From positions 159,016-223,015 of the IMG/VR virus record IMGVR_UViG_3300021511_000003: a DNA stretch of 64,000 bases. One strand, given 5' to 3'. A program made the position numbers and the translations under genes. Below the pieces are notes generated by a model that made no database searches, was not told the DNA's origin, and saw nothing but the letters and a program-made list of their open reading frames with translations. This document shows, piece by piece, positions 1 to 47,449 of this stretch. Position 1 is the stretch's first letter, and every line of letters starts with the position of its first letter.

Positions 1-236
1 AATCTACCATTTTCTGTCATGAGTTTTATATTGCTACCATCTAATTTTTCTACTGCAAAAGTATCTTTATCCTCAAATACCCACTCATATCCAGGAGTGA
101 TTTCAGTAGTTACTAAATATGCAGATGGTCTTCGTAATTGTAATTTTCTTCCATATTTTTTCCATTCAGTTATGTTCACGTCAAAGTCCTTTCTAATAAA
201 AGGACATTGTAGTTTTGGAAAGTTTGTTAGTACCAT
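1..236 (-). CDS. ATP-dependent RNA ligase-like protein, N-terminal part (runs off window edge)
   Basis: Not in ORF track. Manual translation from ATG at 236: MVLTNFPKLQCPFIRK...PGYEWVFEDKDTFAVEKLDGSNIKL, containing ligase motif I KxDG. Confidence 0.7.
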   Translation of the reverse strand, partial: MVLTNFPKLQCPFIRKDFDVNITEWKKYGRKLQLRRPSAYLVTTEITPGYEWVFEDKDTFAVEKLDGSNIKLMTENGR

Positions 237-262
237 TTTTACACCTATATGTATTATTGTGT

Positions 263-1174
263 TTATTCAGTTATTGTTCTTAATTTATTAATATACATTT
301 CCATTTCATCAAGAACTGAATTGATTGAGATATTCGTTGTAATTGCATTTTTTAAAGAACCATAATGATGCTCGAGACATTGAAGAAGTAAAGATTTGAT
401 TTTATCTTCATCTGGAGAATGTTGTAATGAACTAAATGTATATAATGACTCAAGTTCTTTTTCTTTTATTTTAAAGTATTCAACTAATTGGTCTTGACTC
501 CATTCACCACTTCTAATTGATTTTAACTGTTCTCTATTTCTTTCAAGATCAAGATTATGTTCAGTTAGTATTTGTTCTATTTCATTTAATAAACGAACTA
601 CATGATATGCAAATTTTAAATCATATCCATATTTCTGAATCATATCATATCGTGAACTTCCAGGTTCAGGATTTTTAATTTTCATTTTATGAAGTTGGCT
701 ATAAGCATACCCTTTAAATCTATACCATGCTCCTTTATGAAGAAACAATTTTCGGTTTTCTCTGACTAATTCACCTACAGCAGTAGAATGTAAAATACAC
801 CGTATAGGAACGAAAAGAGAGTCAATCATATTGGGATTATTTTGCATACACAATTGAAAATATTTAACAATTGAATATATAGTAAAATCATATTCTTTTT
901 TAGCACTTATATCATTTACATGGTGTTGTTGCCATTGTTCAAATCTTTTATGTTGTTTTCCAAACCCTTGAATTATTCCATTTAAATTAGGAAATACAAC
1001 ATGTTTTGGTGGAATACAAAATCCATAAATATCCATATCTGATGTATCAGATGAAACACCATAAGCAACAGACCCCATAATTACTTCATATTGTACATTG
1101 TTTTTTAGAAATCCAGGTGGTCGAATTAATTGCCTGGATGTTAGTCTATCAATAATTGATCCCATATATATCAC
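263..1174 (-). CDS. DNA polymerase beta-superfamily nucleotidyltransferase (RlaP/YcgL-like)
   Basis: GSVAYG...SDMDIYG pol-beta signature, NPNMIDSLF, YDLKFAYHVVRLL. Confidence 0.75.
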   Translation of the reverse strand: MIYMGSIIDRLTSRQLIRPPGFLKNNVQYEVIMGSVAYGVSSDTSDMDIYGFCIPPKHVVFPNLNGIIQGFGKQHKRFEQWQQHHVNDISAKKEYDFTIYSIVKYFQLCMQNNPNMIDSLFVPIRCILHSTAVGELVRENRKLFLHKGAWYRFKGYAYSQLHKMKIKNPEPGSSRYDMIQKYGYDLKFAYHVVRLLNEIEQILTEHNLDLERNREQLKSIRSGEWSQDQLVEYFKIKEKELESLYTFSSLQHSPDEDKIKSLLLQCLEHHYGSLKNAITTNISINSVLDEMEMYINKLRTITE

Positions 1175-1198
1175 CTTTTATATCATGACCTATATAAA

Positions 1199-2545
1199 TT
1201 AAATTTTTATTCTCTTTATAATTTTAATAAGGTCTTTTTTATTATTCACTATTGGATTTTCAATCACTGCATCAAGTAATATCTTGAGAATTTTACCAAC
1301 GTTTGGTCCTGGTGGAATATTTATACATTCCATTACATCTTTACCATTAATTGCTAAATCTGTAACATTAAATTCTCCAGATAAGGTTATGTGCCTAGCT
1401 TCATAAATCATCATAACCATTTTTTTCAATTCTGTTTTTGAATAATCAGAAACTCCCAAATTTCCTTTTTTATCAGCTACTTTTAATTTAAACCAATCTT
1501 TCCAATTGACCTTATGTTCAGAAAAGAGTCGTAGCATTCTTCTTACCCCTTTTCTTTTTATATCTTTTGATAAACTTCTCATATGAAATCTTGTTAGATC
1601 ACTTACTCGTTTAATTTCATCTTTACTAAATACATATTTGTTCATCCACTCTTTAACAAGTCTTTGACCAATATCTTCATGATCAACAAAATTTTCTTCG
1701 TTTGATTCTATCCATGCATCAGGTTTGCCAATATCATGAATATATCCTGTTAATCTTAATATAGGATCTTTTGGTGAAATATTATCACCAACTAATTTAA
1801 AATGTGTACATAAAGTTTCATTGTGATATTTACCACCAGGAAACCCATATAGTCTATCAAGTTCAGGAAATATATTTTTTAATAAGCCTGTTTCATGTAA
1901 TACATCGAAAAATATACTTGGTTTTTTGTATGGCATTGCTTTCATAAATTCAAGTCTTATTCTTTCCGGTGAAACTTTTAATATAAGATCGCAATTTTTT
2001 TTAATTGCTAAAAAGGTAGATTGATCTAAGGTTCCTTCAATCAGGCAAGTAAATCTTGCGGCACGGATCATTCTTAAATAGTCTTCATAAATTCGTTGTT
2101 CAGCATTTCCTACAAACCTTATAATTTTATTTTCAAGATCTTTTCTACCGTTGAATTTATCTATCACTTCACCAGTATAAGGACATACTGCCATGGCGTT
2201 AAATGTAAAATCTCTACGCATTAAATCATCATCTAAAGTTTCGCACGCAGTAGTAATACAATTATGACGCCCAGGTTTCATATTTTTATCAGATCTATAT
2301 GTTGAAACCTCAATACTATCTATTAATGTTACAAGAAAGCTTGCTCCTACAAGATCTACTTTACGATCAGGAAAGATATGTGCAAGATCATCGGGGGTTG
2401 CATCTGTAACAATATCATAATCATGAGGATCAAAATCTGCAAATATATCTCGTACTGCTCCTCCAACTAAATACGCACTCCAACCACATTCACATATTCT
2501 TTGAATTAACTTATCACTTAATTCTTCTTCAGTATTGCTTTTCAT
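1199..2545 (-). CDS. cca: CCA tRNA nucleotidyltransferase with HD domain
   Basis: LVGGAVRD, DYDIVT, DLMRRDFTFNAMA, EDYLRMIRAARF, HDIGKP (HD). Confidence 0.9.
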   Translation of the reverse strand: MKSNTEEELSDKLIQRICECGWSAYLVGGAVRDIFADFDPHDYDIVTDATPDDLAHIFPDRKVDLVGASFLVTLIDSIEVSTYRSDKNMKPGRHNCITTACETLDDDLMRRDFTFNAMAVCPYTGEVIDKFNGRKDLENKIIRFVGNAEQRIYEDYLRMIRAARFTCLIEGTLDQSTFLAIKKNCDLILKVSPERIRLEFMKAMPYKKPSIFFDVLHETGLLKNIFPELDRLYGFPGGKYHNETLCTHFKLVGDNISPKDPILRLTGYIHDIGKPDAWIESNEENFVDHEDIGQRLVKEWMNKYVFSKDEIKRVSDLTRFHMRSLSKDIKRKGVRRMLRLFSEHKVNWKDWFKLKVADKKGNLGVSDYSKTELKKMVMMIYEARHITLSGEFNVTDLAINGKDVMECINIPPGPNVGKILKILLDAVIENPIVNNKKDLIKIIKRIKI

Positions 2546-2563
2546 AACATACCTTTTTATTTA

Positions 2564-2640
2564 TGGGGTGACCAACGGGATTTGAACCCGTATAACAAGG
2601 GCCACAACCTTGCCTCTGAAACCATTCGAGTATAGCCACC
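2564..2640 (-). tRNA. tRNA-His(GUG), G-1 and CCA encoded
   Basis: Anticodon arm CAAGG-TTGTGGC-CCTTG; acceptor GTGGCTA/TGGTCAC, C73. Confidence 0.93.
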
Positions 2641-5122: not shown

Positions 5123-5208
5123 TGGAGCGGGCGGCGGGATTCGAACCCGCGATGCATAAATGCGTCAACGTGGAAGGCTGATGGAGTACCGGACTCTCCA
5201 ACGCCCGC
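5123..5208 (-). tRNA. tRNA-Gly(UCC) with 14-nt variable arm
   Basis: TCAGC-CTTCCAC-GTTGA; variable region CGCATTTATGCATC; acceptor GCGGGCG/CGCCCGC, U73, CCA. Confidence 0.9.
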
Positions 5209-5313: not shown

Positions 5314-5946
5314 CTAAGTTTTTGGAGTTAGATAAAAATATTTTCGTTCGTTATTATATTTACCCATGAAATATTGTCTTTCATATGTATAATATTTTTT
5401 TGTATGTTTTTTCATGTAATTAATTGTATTCATTGAATGAAAAGATATTATTAATATTGGACAATGTTTTGAAAAATCAAATGTACTGAGTATTTTATCT
5501 TCCCAATTCTCTACATCCATTTTTATTAAATCTGGAAGAGGTAGATTATTTTGTTTAATAAAGTCATAAAGAACAACTGTTTGTACTTCACTTTTATATA
5601 TCCTTGAACGATTATCTGTAGGATATTTTATTGAGTCATCATCCCTTCCTAATAAAAAGTTTTTGTCAAATGATGAACCCCCATCTTTTACAGGTACATT
5701 ATATAATGTTAATTTTTCATTTTTATTACTTACGCCAATATTGAAACTATTAATTTTATTTCCAAATTTACTGACTAATAAATTATATGGATTTGAAGCA
5801 GGATCAAATGCATATATATTGACATTGATTTTTATTAATTGATTGAATAAGTTAATTGTATCTCTATTTGGATATGCACCTAAATCATAATAATTTTTAT
5901 AATTATGAAGTTTACATAACTTAACTATCAACTCTTCTTTTGTCAT
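5314..5946 (-). CDS. FkbM-family SAM-dependent methyltransferase
   Basis: YDLGA (motif I), IYAFDP, PDLIKMDVE; ends in TAG. Confidence 0.7.
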   Translation of the reverse strand: MTKEELIVKLCKLHNYKNYYDLGAYPNRDTINLFNQLIKINVNIYAFDPASNPYNLLVSKFGNKINSFNIGVSNKNEKLTLYNVPVKDGGSSFDKNFLLGRDDDSIKYPTDNRSRIYKSEVQTVVLYDFIKQNNLPLPDLIKMDVENWEDKILSTFDFSKHCPILIISFHSMNTINYMKKHTKKYYTYERQYFMGKYNNERKYFYLTPKT

Positions 5947-7791: not shown

Positions 7792-8105
7792 GTGTATAAT
7801 TCCTTTATATCAAAATAAACTATTTTCGAAGGTCTTTTTTTAAAGACCACTGGACGAAGATCATCCGGATGCCATAAATAAGTTTTTATTATTGCAGCAC
7901 GGACATAATTTTCGGTTGTAATCTTGTCTATTTGATAAGGATGACCAGCCATTTTGCGCATAACAGAATTAACACCAAATAATTCTTTAGTAGTTTCTAT
8001 ATCCTCGTTTATAACAACTGTCATACCAACTTTCATTATATCTGGATGCATTTTTAAAATCCTTTTTATTGGTGGACCAGCTGGGAGTCGAACCCAGTTC
8101 CGCAA
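7788..8105 (-). CDS. hypothetical protein (true start probably downstream of tmRNA 3' end)
   Basis: ORF 5' part overlaps tmRNA end. Confidence 0.45.
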   Translation of the reverse strand: MRNWVRLPAGPPIKRILKMHPDIMKVGMTVVINEDIETTKELFGVNSVMRKMAGHPYQIDKITTENYVRAAIIKTYLWHPDDLRPVVFKKRPSKIVYFDIKELYT

Positions 8106-8455
8106 AAATTCAAATTAAGTATCTACACTCATAGTCAACTTTTAGATTTAGTTACCCCCACGTTCAAACACGGAGTTGACATAACAACGGAGCCAACGGT
8201 GTACATTTGCTGGTAAGTTTGAAAATAAGAATGCCAGTTTGCAGTACCATTGCCCATTCTTATTTCGATCTCTTTACGTCGATGCCCCATCCCAATTCAA
8301 GAGAATAATTGGGTGGAACAGATTAAGCAGCTTTTGCGAAATCGGTGTAATAATCGTCTGCAATTATTGTTAGTGATAATGTTTTTACGGAGTAACATAT
8401 CATTCTCCGGAGTGCAACTTTTTTTTCTTTTCCACGTCGAAACCTTTTCTGGCCC
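8070..8455 (-). ncRNA. ssrA: tmRNA, tag peptide (A)ADDYYTDFAKAA
   Basis: 5' GGGCCAGAAAAGGTTTCGAC; 3' T arm CTGGG-TTCGACT-CCCAG and CTGGTCC-ACCA with G3:U70; tag ORF at 8361-8323 after ATAATT. Confidence 0.93.
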
Positions 8456-9046: not shown

Positions 9047-9118
9047 TGGCCCAGGTGGGGATCGAACCCACGAATGAGGGTTTTAGAGACCCCTGCTCTA
9101 CCACTAAGCTACTGGGCC
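9047..9118 (-). tRNA. amber suppressor tRNA (anticodon CUA), CCA not encoded
   Basis: GGCCCAG/CTGGGCC acceptor, GCTT/GAGC D stem, GGGGT-CTCTAAA-ACCCT, GTGGG-TTCGATC-CCCAC, A73 then TAC. Confidence 0.9.
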
Positions 9119-43674: not shown

Positions 43675-44832
43675 TTATCCCTTTATATTTATTAGTGGTT
43701 TGGCATGATCAATTATATTTATAACTATTCCATTTTGTTTTTTGATTACTTCATAGACATTCTTATAAGCGTCAGGTGCTTCATCTATTGTTGACTGATC
43801 GACCTTAGCAACAATACCTTTCATTTGATTTTTGAAAAGTTTCATGTCAATTGTAGATTTGGCTTTCTTTCTACTCATCGTTCGTCCAGCACCATGTGAA
43901 GCTGAATTTAAGTATTTTTCATTACCTAAACCTTCTGTAACATATACACCAGTTTTCATATTACCAGGAATAATTCCAATTTGCCCTTTTTCAGCAGGTG
44001 TTGCACCTTTTCTGTGTAGAACATGCGTCCCTTTTACCTCTGCATGATTATGATTTTCATTAATCATATGATCATGGACTAAAATACTTATTTCGTGCTC
44101 ATTATAACCAAGCAGTAAAAGAATTTCACTTATCATTAATTTTCTATTATCAATAGCGTACTCAAGGGCAAAATTCATATCTTTGAGATATTGCTGCCCT
44201 GATTCACTATTGAGATGAAAGAAACCTTTTGGCAAATCAATATCAATTTTCTTTGAAAGTTTCATATAATAGCTGGCAATCGAATGACCAATATTTCTTG
44301 AACCAGAATGAACAGTTATAGTTAGGTAACCTTTATTATTTTCACCTATTTCAATGAAATGATTGCCGCCACCTAAAGTACCAAGTTGAACATTTAGTTT
44401 ATTATCAACTTTTTTCTGTAGTTCTTTATCTCTAGATGCGCTTTGAAAATCATAATAAACGTATCCATTTTTTCTAGAATTAAACCCAACAGGTATCGTT
44501 TTATAAATATGTTCAAAAAGTTTTATTTTTTCTGATTCTTGTTTAAAGAACTCTTTTGCTTTAATTTTTGTTGCAATATAACACATACCACAACCAATAT
44601 CATATCCTACATATTCAGGAGATATTACATTATCAAGTAATGCTACACCACCAATCGGTAATGTGTAACCTGTATGACAATCAGGCATTACCGCTAATTT
44701 GATTAAAAAGTCAAGTGCAAGGGCTTCATATATTTGTTGTTGTGCAGTCTGTTCTAATTCATGAATAGGAATTAAACTAAAGAGTTTTTCTAATTTTTTA
44801 ACAGGATTTAAATTTTCTGTGTTTTTAGACAT
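43675..44832 (-). CDS. rtcB: RtcB RNA ligase
   Basis: MPDCH, GYDIGCG, LGGGNHFIE, HSGSR, HNH, HRKGAT, HGAGR. Confidence 0.95.
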   Translation of the reverse strand: MSKNTENLNPVKKLEKLFSLIPIHELEQTAQQQIYEALALDFLIKLAVMPDCHTGYTLPIGGVALLDNVISPEYVGYDIGCGMCYIATKIKAKEFFKQESEKIKLFEHIYKTIPVGFNSRKNGYVYYDFQSASRDKELQKKVDNKLNVQLGTLGGGNHFIEIGENNKGYLTITVHSGSRNIGHSIASYYMKLSKKIDIDLPKGFFHLNSESGQQYLKDMNFALEYAIDNRKLMISEILLLLGYNEHEISILVHDHMINENHNHAEVKGTHVLHRKGATPAEKGQIGIIPGNMKTGVYVTEGLGNEKYLNSASHGAGRTMSRKKAKSTIDMKLFKNQMKGIVAKVDQSTIDEAPDAYKNVYEVIKKQNGIVINIIDHAKPLINIKG

Positions 44833-45769: not shown

Positions 45770-47449
45770 TCACCTCATTTTAATTTCATAAAGTTTGTTA
45801 CTTCTAAAGAATCTAACTTGATTTCCTTCTTTACAAAGTCTCATTGTTGAGTTGATAATAGGATCCTCAATTCGTTTGATATTATTTTTATCAAATTTAT
45901 TGAGAAATATTTCCACTGCATCAGTATCTGTAATTAATACACATACCCCATTATCAAGACATGTAAAATTAATTGGTGTATAATCTACATTCTCTTCTAT
46001 ACGACATTTATATTTATTATGTTTATTATCAAATATAATAATGAATCTGTTATATACACCACCTTTATGACCAGTTATAACACAAATCTTATTTTCATAT
46101 TTAGCATCCATGATTTGAAAGTCATTAAGTTCAGGAATAGATTTGATAATAAAATAACTTTTATCAAATGAGGGTAATGGTATTACCACATATTTTTTTC
46201 CAATAATACTCTGAATTATAACATTACTAAACATTTGACTTGAGTTAGGTTCTATATTCCATACAGTTTTAACAATGGGATGAATTTTTTCACCCATATG
46301 TTTGAATGTTAATTCTATCAGTTTCTCTTTATTTTTTAAAAATAGGACATTGTTGGTTATCATCAGGTCAGTACATTCAAGATCAATTTCTGGATTAATT
46401 CCGCCCATAGATTTAAATTTTACTCTTTTATTTTTAATTTTAACAAGAATAGGATGATTCCTTAAAGGAGTAAAAAGTATCTCAACACCAATAGGGAGTT
46501 CATAATCTGTTTTACCTAAATATAATCTCTCTTTTGTTTTAGTAATACCAAGAGATGCATTATGATAAAGAACATCCCCTAAAAATTCCTGTAACTCTAT
46601 GATTTCAAAATTATCAGTATTTTGAACAAGTTGAACAACAATCTGTGCAACTCCTGCTACACCAGGCATAGCAGGCGGTGGCTTTCGTAAACCATTTTCA
46701 AAAATATTATAGAACCAATCTTTATAAGATGCTGGAATTAAAGAAAAATCTCTGGTTGTTGGAGGTAAGGATACAGAACCATTGAAAACTGATACACAAT
46801 CAATAATTCTTTTTTTAAAATCATTCTTTTTATATCCTCTATGTTTTCCCTTAAATGGATGTATTCCGATAAATAATTGAAAAGCAATAATTCCAAATGA
46901 AAACCAATCTGATAATACTGTAAACTCTTTGGTTGTCCAATCTCTAATTGAAGGCATAATTGCTGTTGGTGGATATGATGGAGTTTTCCATGCATTTACA
47001 TCGATAAAATATGGGGTCACAAAGTCTTTTGAAACCATGTAATTCAGCTCATTATTATCAACTATCAAACATTTTTTATCATGAATAAATTGAGTAGTAT
47101 GTTTAATATTTTCAACCAATTCAATAATTTGATCGTTTTCAATTGCATTGTTATTTCGAAAAGTGTTTGTAAATAATTTGCATAAAGTAACAATATCTTC
47201 TCCTAACCAATTCATTGTAAAACCAATTTCGTGCTTTTTTTCATCGAATACTACATCCTGAGGTCTTACAATACTATCATGATTAAGTCTAGATAGTTCC
47301 CCAATTTTTGCAATAGGGATCATTTTTGTTAAATCATTATATATTTTGAAGGCTATGTTACCTTTTTTGTATATACTACCTTCGCCACCTTTGGTAACAT
47401 AATCATTTTGGACTAAATTCACCTTATGCCCATTTACATAGACAATCAT
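45770..47449 (-). CDS. atypical Ser/Thr kinase (TerY-P-type) with C-terminal extension
   Basis: GGEGSIY, AFKIY, DNNELN, FIDVN, DWFSFGIIAFQLFIGIHPFKG. Confidence 0.8.
   Translation of the reverse strand: MIVYVNGHKVNLVQNDYVTKGGEGSIYKKGNIAFKIYNDLTKMIPIAKIGELSRLNHDSIVRPQDVVFDEKKHEIGFTMNWLGEDIVTLCKLFTNTFRNNNAIENDQIIELVENIKHTTQFIHDKKCLIVDNNELNYMVSKDFVTPYFIDVNAWKTPSYPPTAIMPSIRDWTTKEFTVLSDWFSFGIIAFQLFIGIHPFKGKHRGYKKNDFKKRIIDCVSVFNGSVSLPPTTRDFSLIPASYKDWFYNIFENGLRKPPPAMPGVAGVAQIVVQLVQNTDNFEIIELQEFLGDVLYHNASLGITKTKERLYLGKTDYELPIGVEILFTPLRNHPILVKIKNKRVKFKSMGGINPEIDLECTDLMITNNVLFLKNKEKLIELTFKHMGEKIHPIVKTVWNIEPNSSQMFSNVIIQSIIGKKYVVIPLPSFDKSYFIIKSIPELNDFQIMDAKYENKICVITGHKGGVYNRFIIIFDNKHNKYKCRIEENVDYTPINFTCLDNGVCVLITDTDAVEIFLNKFDKNNIKRIEDPIINSTMRLCKEGNQVRFFRSNKLYEIKMR

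What the first reader, a model, noticed from the sequence alone, without database searches (positions are those of the whole stretch)
1..2545. Three-gene RNA end-repair operon (RNA ligase + RlaP-like NTase + CCA/HD enzyme) next to the tRNA array
Seen: the co-transcribed order is cca-HD, pol-beta NTase, then an unannotated ORF with ligase motif EKLDGSN, directly downstream of tRNA-His. RtcB is encoded separately at 43675. Known: CCA-enzyme HD domains remove 2',3'-cyclic phosphates; RlaP-type NTases are linked to RNA ligases in RNA repair; RtcB seals 2',3'-cyclic phosphate/5'-OH ends. Inference: two chemically distinct ligation routes plus 3'-end healing against anticodon-nuclease and CCA-trimming defences.
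Basis: partly seen in the sequence, partly recalled or inferred. Interest (0 to 1): 0.62.

Follow-up and report, generated by a model that had tools for sequence, protein, structure and literature searches.

The report
Phage tRNA-repair genes inside tRNA array
A large uncultured marine-sediment phage carries, inside its own tRNA gene array, a CCA-adding/HD enzyme, an RlaP nucleotide-adding enzyme and a very small RNA ligase (plus RtcB elsewhere); this is a recognisable but only partly complete version of the tRNA-repair kits already described in jumbo phages.

Summary
On the minus strand, tRNA-His is followed at gaps of 18, about 33 and 26 nt by a class II CCA-type nucleotidyltransferase with an HD domain, an RlaP (PF10127) nucleotidyltransferase and a ligase-like ORF. 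RtcB is at 43675-44832.

Extending the contig completes the ligase. The model is confident, and its nearest folds are the Naegleria Rnl5 nucleotidyltransferase domain, Yasminevirus C12orf29/RLIG1 and T4 Rnl2.

The unit is longer than three genes and lies inside the tRNA array. It continues as tRNA-Arg, a PgpH-like HD phosphodiesterase, tRNA-Cys, peptidyl-tRNA hydrolase PTH2 and tRNA-Lys.

A related phage has the same order without RlaP, and another lacks both CCA and RlaP. RlaP and CCA are therefore accessory insertions here.

Corrections to the interpretation:
- Published biochemistry shows RlaP adds 1-2 nucleotides to RNA 3'-OH ends. It is not known to adenylylate ligases.
- No 5'-kinase was found in the 223 kb record, so the ATP-ligase route for anticodon-nuclease ends is incomplete as seen.

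Ligase plus RlaP plus CCA enzyme in jumbo phages is already published. This is a new member of a known kind, with a little-studied minimal ligase clade.

The parts
2564..2639 (-). tRNA-His(GUG) with encoded CCA end. It lies 18 nt upstream of the CCA-enzyme start codon.
   Evidence: ARAGORN; sequence.
1199..2545 (-). Class II tRNA nucleotidyltransferase (CCA-adding type) of 448 aa with a C-terminal HD phosphohydrolase domain. The GGxVRD...DxD head motifs and an HD dyad (in IHDIGKP) are visible in the translation.
   Evidence: Pfam PF01743, PF12627, PF13735 and PF01966, all above cut-off. phrog_2244 tRNA nucleotidyltransferase at 6.1e-69. The NCBIfam CCA models are the best hits but fall below their equivalog cut-offs. 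The HD match is confirmed in the genome scan at G000 160583-160783.
263..1174 (-). RlaP-family Pol-beta nucleotidyltransferase. It is 303 aa from the GTG at 1174, or more likely 300 aa from the ATG at 1165. The GS...DxD catalytic signature is present.
   Evidence: PF10127 at 76.7 bits against a cut-off of 23. phrog_388 at 4.1e-45. It is the only RlaP in the record. Shine-Dalgarno sequence before the ATG at 1165. The best cultured relatives are Caulobacter jumbo phages at about 54% identity.
1..236 (-). First 78 codons of a 230-aa minimal ATP-type RNA ligase. The whole gene is G000:C1:158559-159251 (L001 1044-1736), so it extends 457 nt beyond the window start. The motif I lysine K64 is at window 47-45.
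   Evidence: Full ORF. PF09414 at 20.6 bits, below the cut-off of 27. RNA-ligase PHROGs at about 1e-7. Invariant K64, R85, E123, E190-G191 and K209-R211. AlphaFold pLDDT 91.7. Z 11.4 to NgrRnl, 11.2 to Yasminevirus C12orf29 and 10.7 to T4 Rnl2. The family profile hits T4 Rnl2 at E 4.3e-4.
43675..44832 (-). RtcB 3'-phosphate/5'-OH RNA ligase of 385 aa. It is encoded about 41 kb away and is not part of the same gene string.
   Evidence: PF01139 at 1.7e-84, 285 bits.
8070..8455 (-). Phage-encoded tmRNA within the same tRNA array. It is a ribosome-rescue component that fits the same tRNA and translation maintenance theme.
   Evidence: ARAGORN.

Best explanation
This is a tRNA maintenance and repair island built into the tRNA array of a large uncultured phage from marine sediment and hydrothermal-vent samples.

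Gene order on the minus strand:
- tRNA-His
- CCA/HD enzyme
- RlaP
- minimal RNA ligase
- tRNA-Arg(ACG)
- PgpH-like HD phosphodiesterase
- tRNA-Cys
- PTH2 peptidyl-tRNA hydrolase
- tRNA-Lys

RtcB and a tmRNA are encoded elsewhere in the window.

Proposed working, all inferred from homology. When host or rival nucleases cut tRNAs, RtcB directly joins 2',3'-cyclic-phosphate (or 3'-phosphate) ends to 5'-OH ends. The 230-aa ligase adenylylates itself on K64 and seals 3'-OH/5'-phosphate breaks. These are probably breaks in tRNA anticodon loops, as shown for the similarly minimal C12orf29/RLIG1 ligases. RlaP adds back one or two nucleotides to a trimmed 3'-OH end before sealing. The CCA enzyme rebuilds damaged 3'-CCA ends, and its HD domain may remove 2',3'-cyclic or 3'-phosphates. 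PTH2 and the tmRNA clear ribosomes stalled on broken tRNAs.

The island is modular. The ligase, tRNA-Arg and HD framework is shared with relatives, while CCA and especially RlaP are add-ons in this phage.
For: Identities:
- CCA/HD and RlaP pass the Pfam cut-offs.
- RtcB does too.
- PTH2 matches at 4.8e-33.

Ligase:
- The ORF is complete at 230 aa.
- All nucleotidyltransferase motifs are invariant across 36 close and 24 broader relatives.
- 35 of 36 relatives match PF09414 at E <= 0.01.
- The confident model is closest to RNA ligases at Z 10-11.4. DNA ligases score about 8.
- The profile hits T4 Rnl2, then NgrRnl, then C12orf29, aligning the motif I lysine and motif III.
- The nearest Atlas clusters carry PF09414 and PF17720 RLIG1.

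Context:
- The genes are tightly packed on one strand with Shine-Dalgarno sites.
- They are embedded among 24 tRNA genes and a tmRNA.
- The same ligase family lies inside or beside tRNA arrays in other viral contigs, namely L003, L006, L009 and L012.
- The order is syntenic in L038/L039 and L040/L041.

Literature:
- RlaP adds 1-2 NMP to RNA 3'-OH and helps restore tRNA function.
- C12orf29 homologues, which lack an RNA-binding domain, ligate 5'-P/3'-OH breaks in tRNA anticodon loops.
- Jumbo phages commonly combine ATP-grasp ligases, RtcB, RlaP and CCA enzymes (PMC7824862).

Most phage tRNA genes here encode their CCA. The CCA enzyme is therefore more likely for repair than for primary maturation.
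Against: - No activity has been measured and no RNA data exist for this phage.
- No 5'-kinase, 2H or HAD-type end-healing enzyme was recognised in the 223 kb record. The ATP ligase may therefore only see ends that already carry a 5'-phosphate, or it may depend on host or unsequenced genes, since about 29% of the genome is missing.
- The ligase itself scores below the PF09414 cut-off and has no appended RNA-binding domain.
- RlaP and CCA are absent next to this ligase in most relatives, so the three genes need not act as an obligate unit.
- The downstream HD protein is a close homologue of a c-di-AMP phosphodiesterase. That points to a signalling or counter-defence role rather than RNA end healing.
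Confidence: 0.7

Rival explanations
1. These are housekeeping genes for the phage's own tRNA supply rather than repair of attack damage. The CCA enzyme would complete or proof-read the 3' ends of the roughly 24 phage tRNAs. RlaP and the ligase would tidy processing intermediates released from a long tRNA-mRNA transcript. PTH2 and tmRNA would serve general translation quality control.
For: All the genes are interleaved with tRNA genes on one strand. The tRNAs must therefore be cut out of transcripts that also carry these mRNAs. At least tRNA-Lys, tRNA-Asp and the CUA tRNA lack an encoded CCA. The ligase family sits in tRNA arrays in several phages.
Against: Most of the tRNA genes encode CCA. 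No tRNA introns were seen, and the long tRNA-Gly(UCC) has an extra arm rather than an intron, so maturation has no evident need for a ligase. RlaP biochemistry favours damaged ends as substrates. RtcB, RlaP and the ligases are described as counter-defence tools in jumbo phages.
Confidence: 0.15
2. The 230-aa protein is the catalytic subunit of the phage's DNA ligase, perhaps working with a separate DNA-binding partner. Its position in the tRNA array would then be incidental.
For: No ATP- or NAD-dependent DNA ligase domain was detected in the 223 kb record. Split phage DNA ligases exist among the weak structural matches, such as PDB 9hu3. The nucleotidyltransferase fold is shared with DNA ligases at Z about 8.
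Against: RNA ligases are clearly the better matches in structure, at Z 10-11.4 against about 8. They are also the only matches in sequence profile and in Pfam, PHROG and Atlas labels. No OB-fold partner is adjacent. The placement among tRNA genes recurs in several lineages. Many phages rely on the host ligase, and 29% of this genome is unseen.
Confidence: 0.05
3. The ligase and the downstream PgpH-like HD enzyme form the functional pair. The HD enzyme would act on RNA 2',3'-cyclic or 3'-phosphate ends, or make 5'-P/3'-OH cuts. RlaP and CCA would be optional extras.
For: Ligase and HD protein are neighbours here, in L038/L039 and in L040/L041. In L007 they are also neighbours but in the opposite order. 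Both families are unusually conserved, at about 70-80% identity over hundreds of metagenomic sequences. The metal-binding H, HD, H, HH and D positions align with Listeria PgpH.
Against: The HD protein matches the PgpH HD domain at E 8.5e-41, and that enzyme is a c-di-AMP phosphodiesterase, which gives a simpler reading. The pairing is missing in most other ligase loci. Adjacency among close relatives may be inherited synteny rather than selection.
Confidence: 0.1

Closest known systems
Jumbo-phage RNA repair gene sets: ATP-grasp RNA ligase, RlaP, CCA-adding enzyme and RtcB, with peptidyl-tRNA hydrolase (Burroughs & Aravind 2016 as cited in PMC7824862; Iyer et al. 2021, PMC7824862 section 3.4.9)
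   Same: The same components occur in a large tRNA-rich phage, with the same predicted logic. RlaP restores lost 3' nucleotides, a ligase seals, the CCA enzyme restores 3' ends, and RtcB handles cyclic-phosphate ends.
   Different: The ligase here is not Rnl1 or a typical Rnl2. It is a 230-aa domain-only enzyme with no match in GenBank phage genomes. No polynucleotide kinase or phosphatase partner was found. The genes are interleaved with individual tRNA genes.
C12orf29/RLIG1 RNA ligases (PF17720), including Yasminevirus C12orf29, PDB 9c6l (PMC11071452)
   Same: Both have a minimal single-domain nucleotidyltransferase fold without an RNA-binding domain. Structural match is Z 11.2, rmsd 2.8 A over 164 residues. 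They share an E-L-x-G-P-K-x-Q-x-N-P stretch around motif III. The nearest Atlas clusters partly carry PF17720. RLIG1 enzymes seal 5'-P/3'-OH breaks in tRNA anticodon loops.
   Different: This protein gives no PF17720 hit, and only 2 of 36 relatives do so, weakly. Sequence identity is about 20%. It has a distinctive conserved N-terminal P-K...P-F-x-R segment.
T4 Rnl2 and Naegleria/Deinococcus Rnl5 nick-sealing RNA ligases (PF09414)
   Same: These are the best sequence-profile and structural matches. The motif I, Ia and III residues align.
   Different: It lacks the Rnl2 C-terminal domain and the Rnl5 N-terminal OB-like domain that those enzymes use to engage RNA. It scores below the PF09414 cut-off.
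T4 Pnkp + Rnl1 heal-and-seal pathway against the PrrC anticodon nuclease
   Same: A phage-encoded ATP RNA ligase presumed to reverse tRNA cleavage.
   Different: No Rnl1 and no recognisable kinase-phosphatase. End healing, if any, would have to come from HD domains or the host.
Pseudomonas RtcB-RlaP-RtcA operons (bioRxiv 10.64898/2025.12.29.696909)
   Same: An RlaP gene sits next to an RNA ligase gene. The RlaP activity on RNA 3'-OH ends is the presumed function here.
   Different: Here RlaP is next to a 5'-phosphate ligase, whose chemistry is compatible with RlaP's 3'-OH product. It is not next to RtcB, which lies 41 kb away.
Listeria PgpH HD-domain c-di-AMP phosphodiesterase (PDB 4s1b), for the downstream 253-aa gene
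   Same: Match at E 8.5e-41 over residues 23-238, with the metal-ligand positions aligned.
   Different: The phage protein is the soluble HD domain alone, without the membrane sensor part. Its substrate is untested.

Membership tests
ATP-dependent RNA ligase, covalent nucleotidyltransferase superfamily (PF09414-type) | Motif I KxDG with the adenylylated lysine | tested here: met
   K64 lies in E-K-L-D-G. K64 and G67 are invariant in 36 close and 24 broader relatives. The lysine aligns with the motif I lysine of T4 Rnl2.
ATP-dependent RNA ligase, covalent nucleotidyltransferase superfamily (PF09414-type) | Motifs Ia, III, IIIa, IV and V in order | tested here: met
   Invariant N84-R85, G122-E123, P143 (F144 nearly invariant), E190-G191 and K209-L210-R211. 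Motif III aligns with Rnl2 and NgrRnl. Assignment of IIIa, IV and V is by position and pattern, not by a residue-level structural superposition.
ATP-dependent RNA ligase, covalent nucleotidyltransferase superfamily (PF09414-type) | Score above the Pfam PF09414 gathering threshold | tested here: inconclusive
   This protein scores 20.6 bits against 27. 35 of 36 relatives match at E <= 0.01. Several relatives carry a precomputed PF09414 label.
ATP-dependent RNA ligase, covalent nucleotidyltransferase superfamily (PF09414-type) | Nucleotidyltransferase (ATP-grasp-like) fold | tested here: met
   Model pLDDT 91.7. Z 11.4 to NgrRnl residues 137-338, 11.2 to C12orf29 and 10.7 to the Rnl2 N-domain.
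Rnl2 / Rnl5 clades specifically | Appended RNA-engaging domain: Rnl2 C-terminal domain or Rnl5 N-terminal OB-like domain | tested here: not met
   The whole 230-aa protein aligns to the nucleotidyltransferase domain only (model 1-221 against NgrRnl 137-338). There is no extra domain.
RLIG1 / C12orf29 (PF17720) | Pfam PF17720 match | tested here: not met
   No hit at E <= 1 for this protein. Only 2 of 36 relatives hit, best E 7.1e-4. Neighbouring Atlas clusters carry it in 21-70% of members.
RLIG1 / C12orf29 (PF17720) | Minimal single-domain ligase architecture | tested here: met
   230 aa, one domain. Rmsd 2.8 A over 164 residues to PDB 9c6l. The paper describes the same lack of an RNA-binding domain.
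RlaP (PF10127) | Pfam match above cut-off and the Pol-beta GS...DxD catalytic signature | tested here: met
   76.7 bits against 23. G-S...D-M-D is visible near residues 34-49 of the translation.
RlaP (PF10127) | Gene neighbourhood with an RNA ligase | tested here: met
   The ligase start lies 26 nt after the RlaP stop on the same strand. This is specific to this phage among relatives of the ligase.
RlaP (PF10127) | Adds 1-2 NMP to RNA 3'-OH | not testable with these tools
   Shown for the Pseudomonas enzymes only.
Class II CCA-adding enzyme with HD domain | Head, RNA-binding, tail and HD domain set | tested here: met
   PF01743, PF12627, PF13735 and PF01966 are all above cut-off.
Class II CCA-adding enzyme with HD domain | Equivalog-level assignment as CCA-adding rather than A-adding or poly(A) polymerase | tested here: inconclusive
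   The best NCBIfam hit is the CCA model PRK13299, at 212 bits against a cut-off of 290. PcnB scores 160 against 306.
T4-type heal-and-seal pathway | 5'-polynucleotide kinase and 3'-phosphatase partner | tested here: not met
   Only a generic 200-aa P-loop protein was found, with AAA_33 at 20.6 bits below its cut-off. There is no 2H enzyme. The record is about 71% complete, so absence is not proven.
RtcB | Pfam PF01139 full-length match | tested here: met
   285 bits, profile positions 1-426.

The most novel reading that the evidence does not exclude
The 230-aa protein represents a distinct clade of domain-only RNA ligases. The clade is widespread and strongly conserved, lies between Rnl2/Rnl5 and RLIG1, and is specialised for phage tRNA arrays. 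In this reading it works with the neighbouring soluble PgpH-like HD enzyme as a new two-protein heal-and-seal system that needs no classical polynucleotide kinase-phosphatase. RlaP and CCA would be bolt-on modules.
Probability: 0.2. Interest if true: 0.6.

Novelty: new member of a known kind. Interest (0 to 1): 0.36.

Why it matters
tRNA cleavage is a common bacterial anti-phage strategy, and phage tRNA arrays with repair enzymes are the known reply.

This locus shows a compact, modular form of that reply in an uncultured sediment phage. It also points to a very small RNA ligase family with more than 1000 metagenomic members, none of them in GenBank phage genomes. That family is a viral counterpart of the recently discovered human RLIG1-type ligases.

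Such a small, conserved 5'-P/3'-OH RNA ligase could be useful as a reagent. It would also help explain how ligases without an RNA-binding domain choose tRNA substrates.

The overall concept is already published, so the gain is incremental.

Tried and rejected
- Single-sequence PDB search with the ligase gave nothing. Only the broader family profile reached RNA ligases.
- tblastn of the ligase against 50,697 GenBank phage records gave no match.
- I tested whether RlaP regularly accompanies this ligase family. It does not: 1 of 21 viral records, and none within 6 kb in 29 loci by tblastn.
- The gene after RlaP in Caulobacter phage CcrSC is not a relative of this ligase.
- A polynucleotide kinase was sought with PF13671. 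The best candidate is a generic P-loop protein and was rejected as evidence.
- Rnl1, 2H phosphoesterase and DNA ligase domains were not found.
- Short tRNA introns that would call for a splicing ligase were considered because some tRNAs are long. The tRNA-Gly(UCC) that was inspected owes its extra length to an additional arm, not an intron.
- TAG recoding, suggested by the CUA tRNA, showed no sign.
- Expression could not be checked because no RNA run holds the sequence.
- The Burroughs & Aravind 2016 paper that defined RlaP is not held in the library, so it is cited only through papers that quote it.
- No complex prediction was run, because no claim of protein-protein binding is made.
Full report
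**What is there.** The window is the last 64 kb of a 223,015-bp linear viral record estimated about 71% complete. It has 30% G+C. Near-identical DNA occurs in marine-sediment and hydrothermal-vent metagenomes from several studies.

The first 17 kb of the window carry 20 tRNA genes and a tmRNA, all on the minus strand. Three more tRNA genes lie just upstream of the window on the same strand.

Within this array, in the direction of transcription, the order is as follows.

| Element | Position | Size |
|---|---|---|
| tRNA-His | window 2564-2639 | |
| CCA/HD enzyme | window 1199-2545 | 448 aa |
| RlaP | window 263-1174 | 303 aa |
| Ligase-like ORF | starts at window 236; complete ORF is L001 1044-1736 (G000 158559-159251) | 230 aa |
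| tRNA-Arg(ACG) | begins a few nt after the ligase stop | |
| HD-domain protein | G000 157688-158449 | 253 aa |
| tRNA-Cys | | |
| PTH2 peptidyl-tRNA hydrolase | L002 11756-12166 | 136 aa |
| tRNA-Lys | | |

The gaps are 18 nt from tRNA-His to CCA, 24 nt from CCA to the listed GTG of RlaP, and 26 nt from RlaP to the ligase. RlaP more probably starts at the ATG at 1165, which is preceded by AAAGGTGA. The ligase and the HD gene also have clear Shine-Dalgarno sequences. The terminator scan found no site on the minus strand.

Co-transcription is therefore plausible, but it is inferred. No RNA run holds this sequence.

The gene order is real. Contigs from four other runs tile the stretch without differences and bridge both the ligase/RlaP and the RlaP/CCA junctions. 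One 7.3-kb contig spans ligase, RlaP and CCA.

**The three named genes.** The 448-aa protein has the full class II tRNA nucleotidyltransferase domain set plus an HD domain, all above the Pfam cut-offs. It also matches the phage tRNA-nucleotidyltransferase PHROG at 6e-69. The NCBIfam CCA models are its best hits but fall below their equivalog cut-offs. 'CCA-adding' is thus the likeliest activity, not a proven one.

The 303-aa protein is an unambiguous RlaP (PF10127, 76.7 bits against 23). Its closest cultured relatives are in Caulobacter jumbo phages, at about 54% identity.

RtcB at 43675-44832 is confirmed.

**The ligase.** The full protein is 230 aa.

It has 1062 relatives of about the same length in the large protein collection. 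The top 120 are 69-84% identical and almost all come from metagenomes. It has no match in GenBank phage genomes.

In alignments of 36 close relatives and of 24 broader relatives (down to 38% identity), the invariant residues fall on the ligase motifs:
- K64 and G67, motif I
- N84-R85, motif Ia
- G122-E123, motif III
- P143, motif IIIa
- E190-G191, motif IV
- K209-L210-R211, motif V

There is also a family-specific N-terminal P-K...P-F-x-R segment.

The protein itself is below the PF09414 cut-off (20.6 against 27 bits). However, 35 of 36 relatives match PF09414 at E <= 0.01, and two weakly match PF17720 RLIG1. The nearest Atlas clusters carry those two families.

The AlphaFold model is confident, with pLDDT 91.7 and pTM 0.85. 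Its best structural matches are these (Foldseek):

| Structure | Z |
|---|---|
| Naegleria Rnl5 nucleotidyltransferase domain | 11.4 |
| Yasminevirus C12orf29 (rmsd 2.8 A over 164 residues) | 11.2 |
| T4 Rnl2 N-domain | 10.7 |
| Trypanosome REL1 | 10.1 |
| T4 Rnl1 | 8.8 |
| DNA ligases | about 8 |

The broader family profile reaches T4 Rnl2 at E 4.3e-4, NgrRnl at 4e-3 and C12orf29 at 0.019. Motifs I, Ia and III are aligned in those matches.

The whole protein corresponds to the catalytic domain alone. It has neither the Rnl2 C-terminal domain nor the Rnl5 N-terminal domain. This resembles C12orf29/RLIG1 enzymes. Those are active 5'-P/3'-OH RNA ligases that seal tRNA anticodon-loop breaks despite lacking an RNA-binding domain.

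The ORF is best read as a minimal ATP-dependent RNA ligase.

**Is the three-gene operon a unit?** Not a conserved one.
- A related phage (L038/L039, ligase 80% identical) has the same framework of tRNA-His, CCA/HD, ligase, small Zn-ribbon ORF, tRNA-Arg(ACG), HD protein, tRNA-Cys, PTH2 and tRNA-Lys. It has no RlaP, and RtcB lies 5 kb upstream.
- Another relative (L040/L041, 84% identical) has tRNA-His, two small ORFs, ligase, Zn-ribbon, tRNA-Arg and HD protein. It has neither CCA nor RlaP.
- Other relatives at about 74% identity have none of these neighbours.
- In 21 viral records with the ligase family, only one has any RlaP.

What does recur is the association with tRNA genes. The ligase is flanked by tRNAs on both sides in L003 and L006. 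It sits within or beside arrays in L009 and L012, and it has tRNAs within a few kb in several others.

The island is thus modular, and RlaP is a lineage-specific insertion between CCA and the ligase.

**Mechanism.** All steps below are inferred from homology.
- RtcB seals 2',3'-cyclic-phosphate or 3'-phosphate ends to 5'-OH ends. This is established for the family.
- The 230-aa enzyme should seal 3'-OH/5'-phosphate ends after self-adenylylation of K64.
- RlaP should add one or two nucleotides to 3'-OH ends. Its product is chemically compatible with a 5'-phosphate ligase, as the RlaP authors note.
- The CCA enzyme should rebuild 3' ends. Most phage tRNA genes here already encode CCA, so this is repair rather than primary maturation.
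- E. coli CCA enzyme's HD domain has 2',3'-cyclic phosphodiesterase and phosphatase activities. That statement rests on my own knowledge of the literature and was not checked here. The HD dyad is present in this protein.
- PTH2 and the tmRNA fit the same theme of rescuing translation after tRNA damage. The jumbo-phage survey describes this combination.

**Weak points.**
- No 5'-kinase was found, and neither was a 2H phosphoesterase nor Rnl1. As seen, the ATP ligase could only handle breaks that already have a 5'-phosphate, unless a kinase lies in the missing 29% or comes from the host.
- No DNA ligase domain was found either. This leaves a small chance that the protein serves DNA metabolism.
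- The suggestion that RlaP adenylylates the ligase has no support.

**The downstream HD protein.** It matches the HD domain of Listeria PgpH, a c-di-AMP phosphodiesterase (PDB 4s1b), at E 8.5e-41 over residues 23-238. The metal-ligand positions are aligned. It has 649 relatives at about 67-81% identity.

It is a neighbour of the ligase here, in L038-L041 and, in the reverse order, in L007. Whether it heals RNA ends or degrades cyclic nucleotides cannot be decided here.

**Comparison with the known.** Ligase plus RlaP plus CCA enzyme plus RtcB in tRNA-rich jumbo phages is described in Iyer et al. 2021 (PMC7824862). That paper cites Burroughs and Aravind 2016, which is not held in the library. 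RlaP biochemistry is now available.

The finding is therefore a new member of a known kind. The less ordinary points are the minimal ligase clade, the gene-by-gene interleaving with tRNAs, the lack of a recognisable kinase, and the PgpH-like neighbour.

**Verdict.** Novelty is modest.

Noticed in passing
G000:C1:157688-158449 (L002 12673-13434, minus strand), 566-1327 nt before the window start: A 253-aa soluble HD protein matches the Listeria PgpH c-di-AMP phosphodiesterase HD domain (PDB 4s1b) at E 8.5e-41, with the metal ligands aligned. It has 649 conserved metagenomic relatives but only a few weak matches in GenBank phage records. It often neighbours the minimal ligase. It could be a phage enzyme that degrades cyclic-nucleotide signals.
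   Followed up: partly
window 8070-8455 (-): A phage-encoded tmRNA with tag peptide ADDYYTDFAKAA lies inside the tRNA array.
   Followed up: no
window 9047-9118 (-): A tRNA with a CUA anticodon, an amber suppressor that ARAGORN labels Pyl. TAG ends only 15 of 193 long frames. Only 3 same-frame TAG junctions between long frames were found, so there is no clear sign of TAG recoding.
   Followed up: partly
G000:C1:156771-157181 (L002 11756-12166, minus strand): An archaeal/eukaryotic-type peptidyl-tRNA hydrolase PTH2 (PF01981, 4.8e-33) sits between tRNA-Cys and tRNA-Lys. It is conserved at the same place in L038/L039.
   Followed up: partly
window 5123-5208 (-): tRNA-Gly(UCC) is 86 nt long with an extra stem-loop in the variable region, which is unusual for a glycine tRNA. 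Similarly long Gly, Met, Ile and Lys tRNAs appear in related arrays such as L003, L006 and L009.
   Followed up: partly
window 5314-5946 (-): An FkbM-type methyltransferase (PF05050, 1.3e-11) is encoded between tRNA genes. It may be an RNA-modifying enzyme.
   Followed up: no
window 45770-47449 (-): A 559-aa protein with a weak protein-kinase domain match (27.2 bits, below the cut-off) lies about 1 kb from RtcB.
   Followed up: no
whole record G000 (223 kb): No ATP- or NAD-dependent DNA ligase domain was detected in the sequenced 71% of the genome.
   Followed up: partly
L038/L039 8720-8905 and L040 2588-2785: In relatives, a small Zn_ribbon_8 ORF lies between the ligase and tRNA-Arg. In this phage the tRNA-Arg follows the ligase stop directly, and no such ORF is present.
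   Followed up: no
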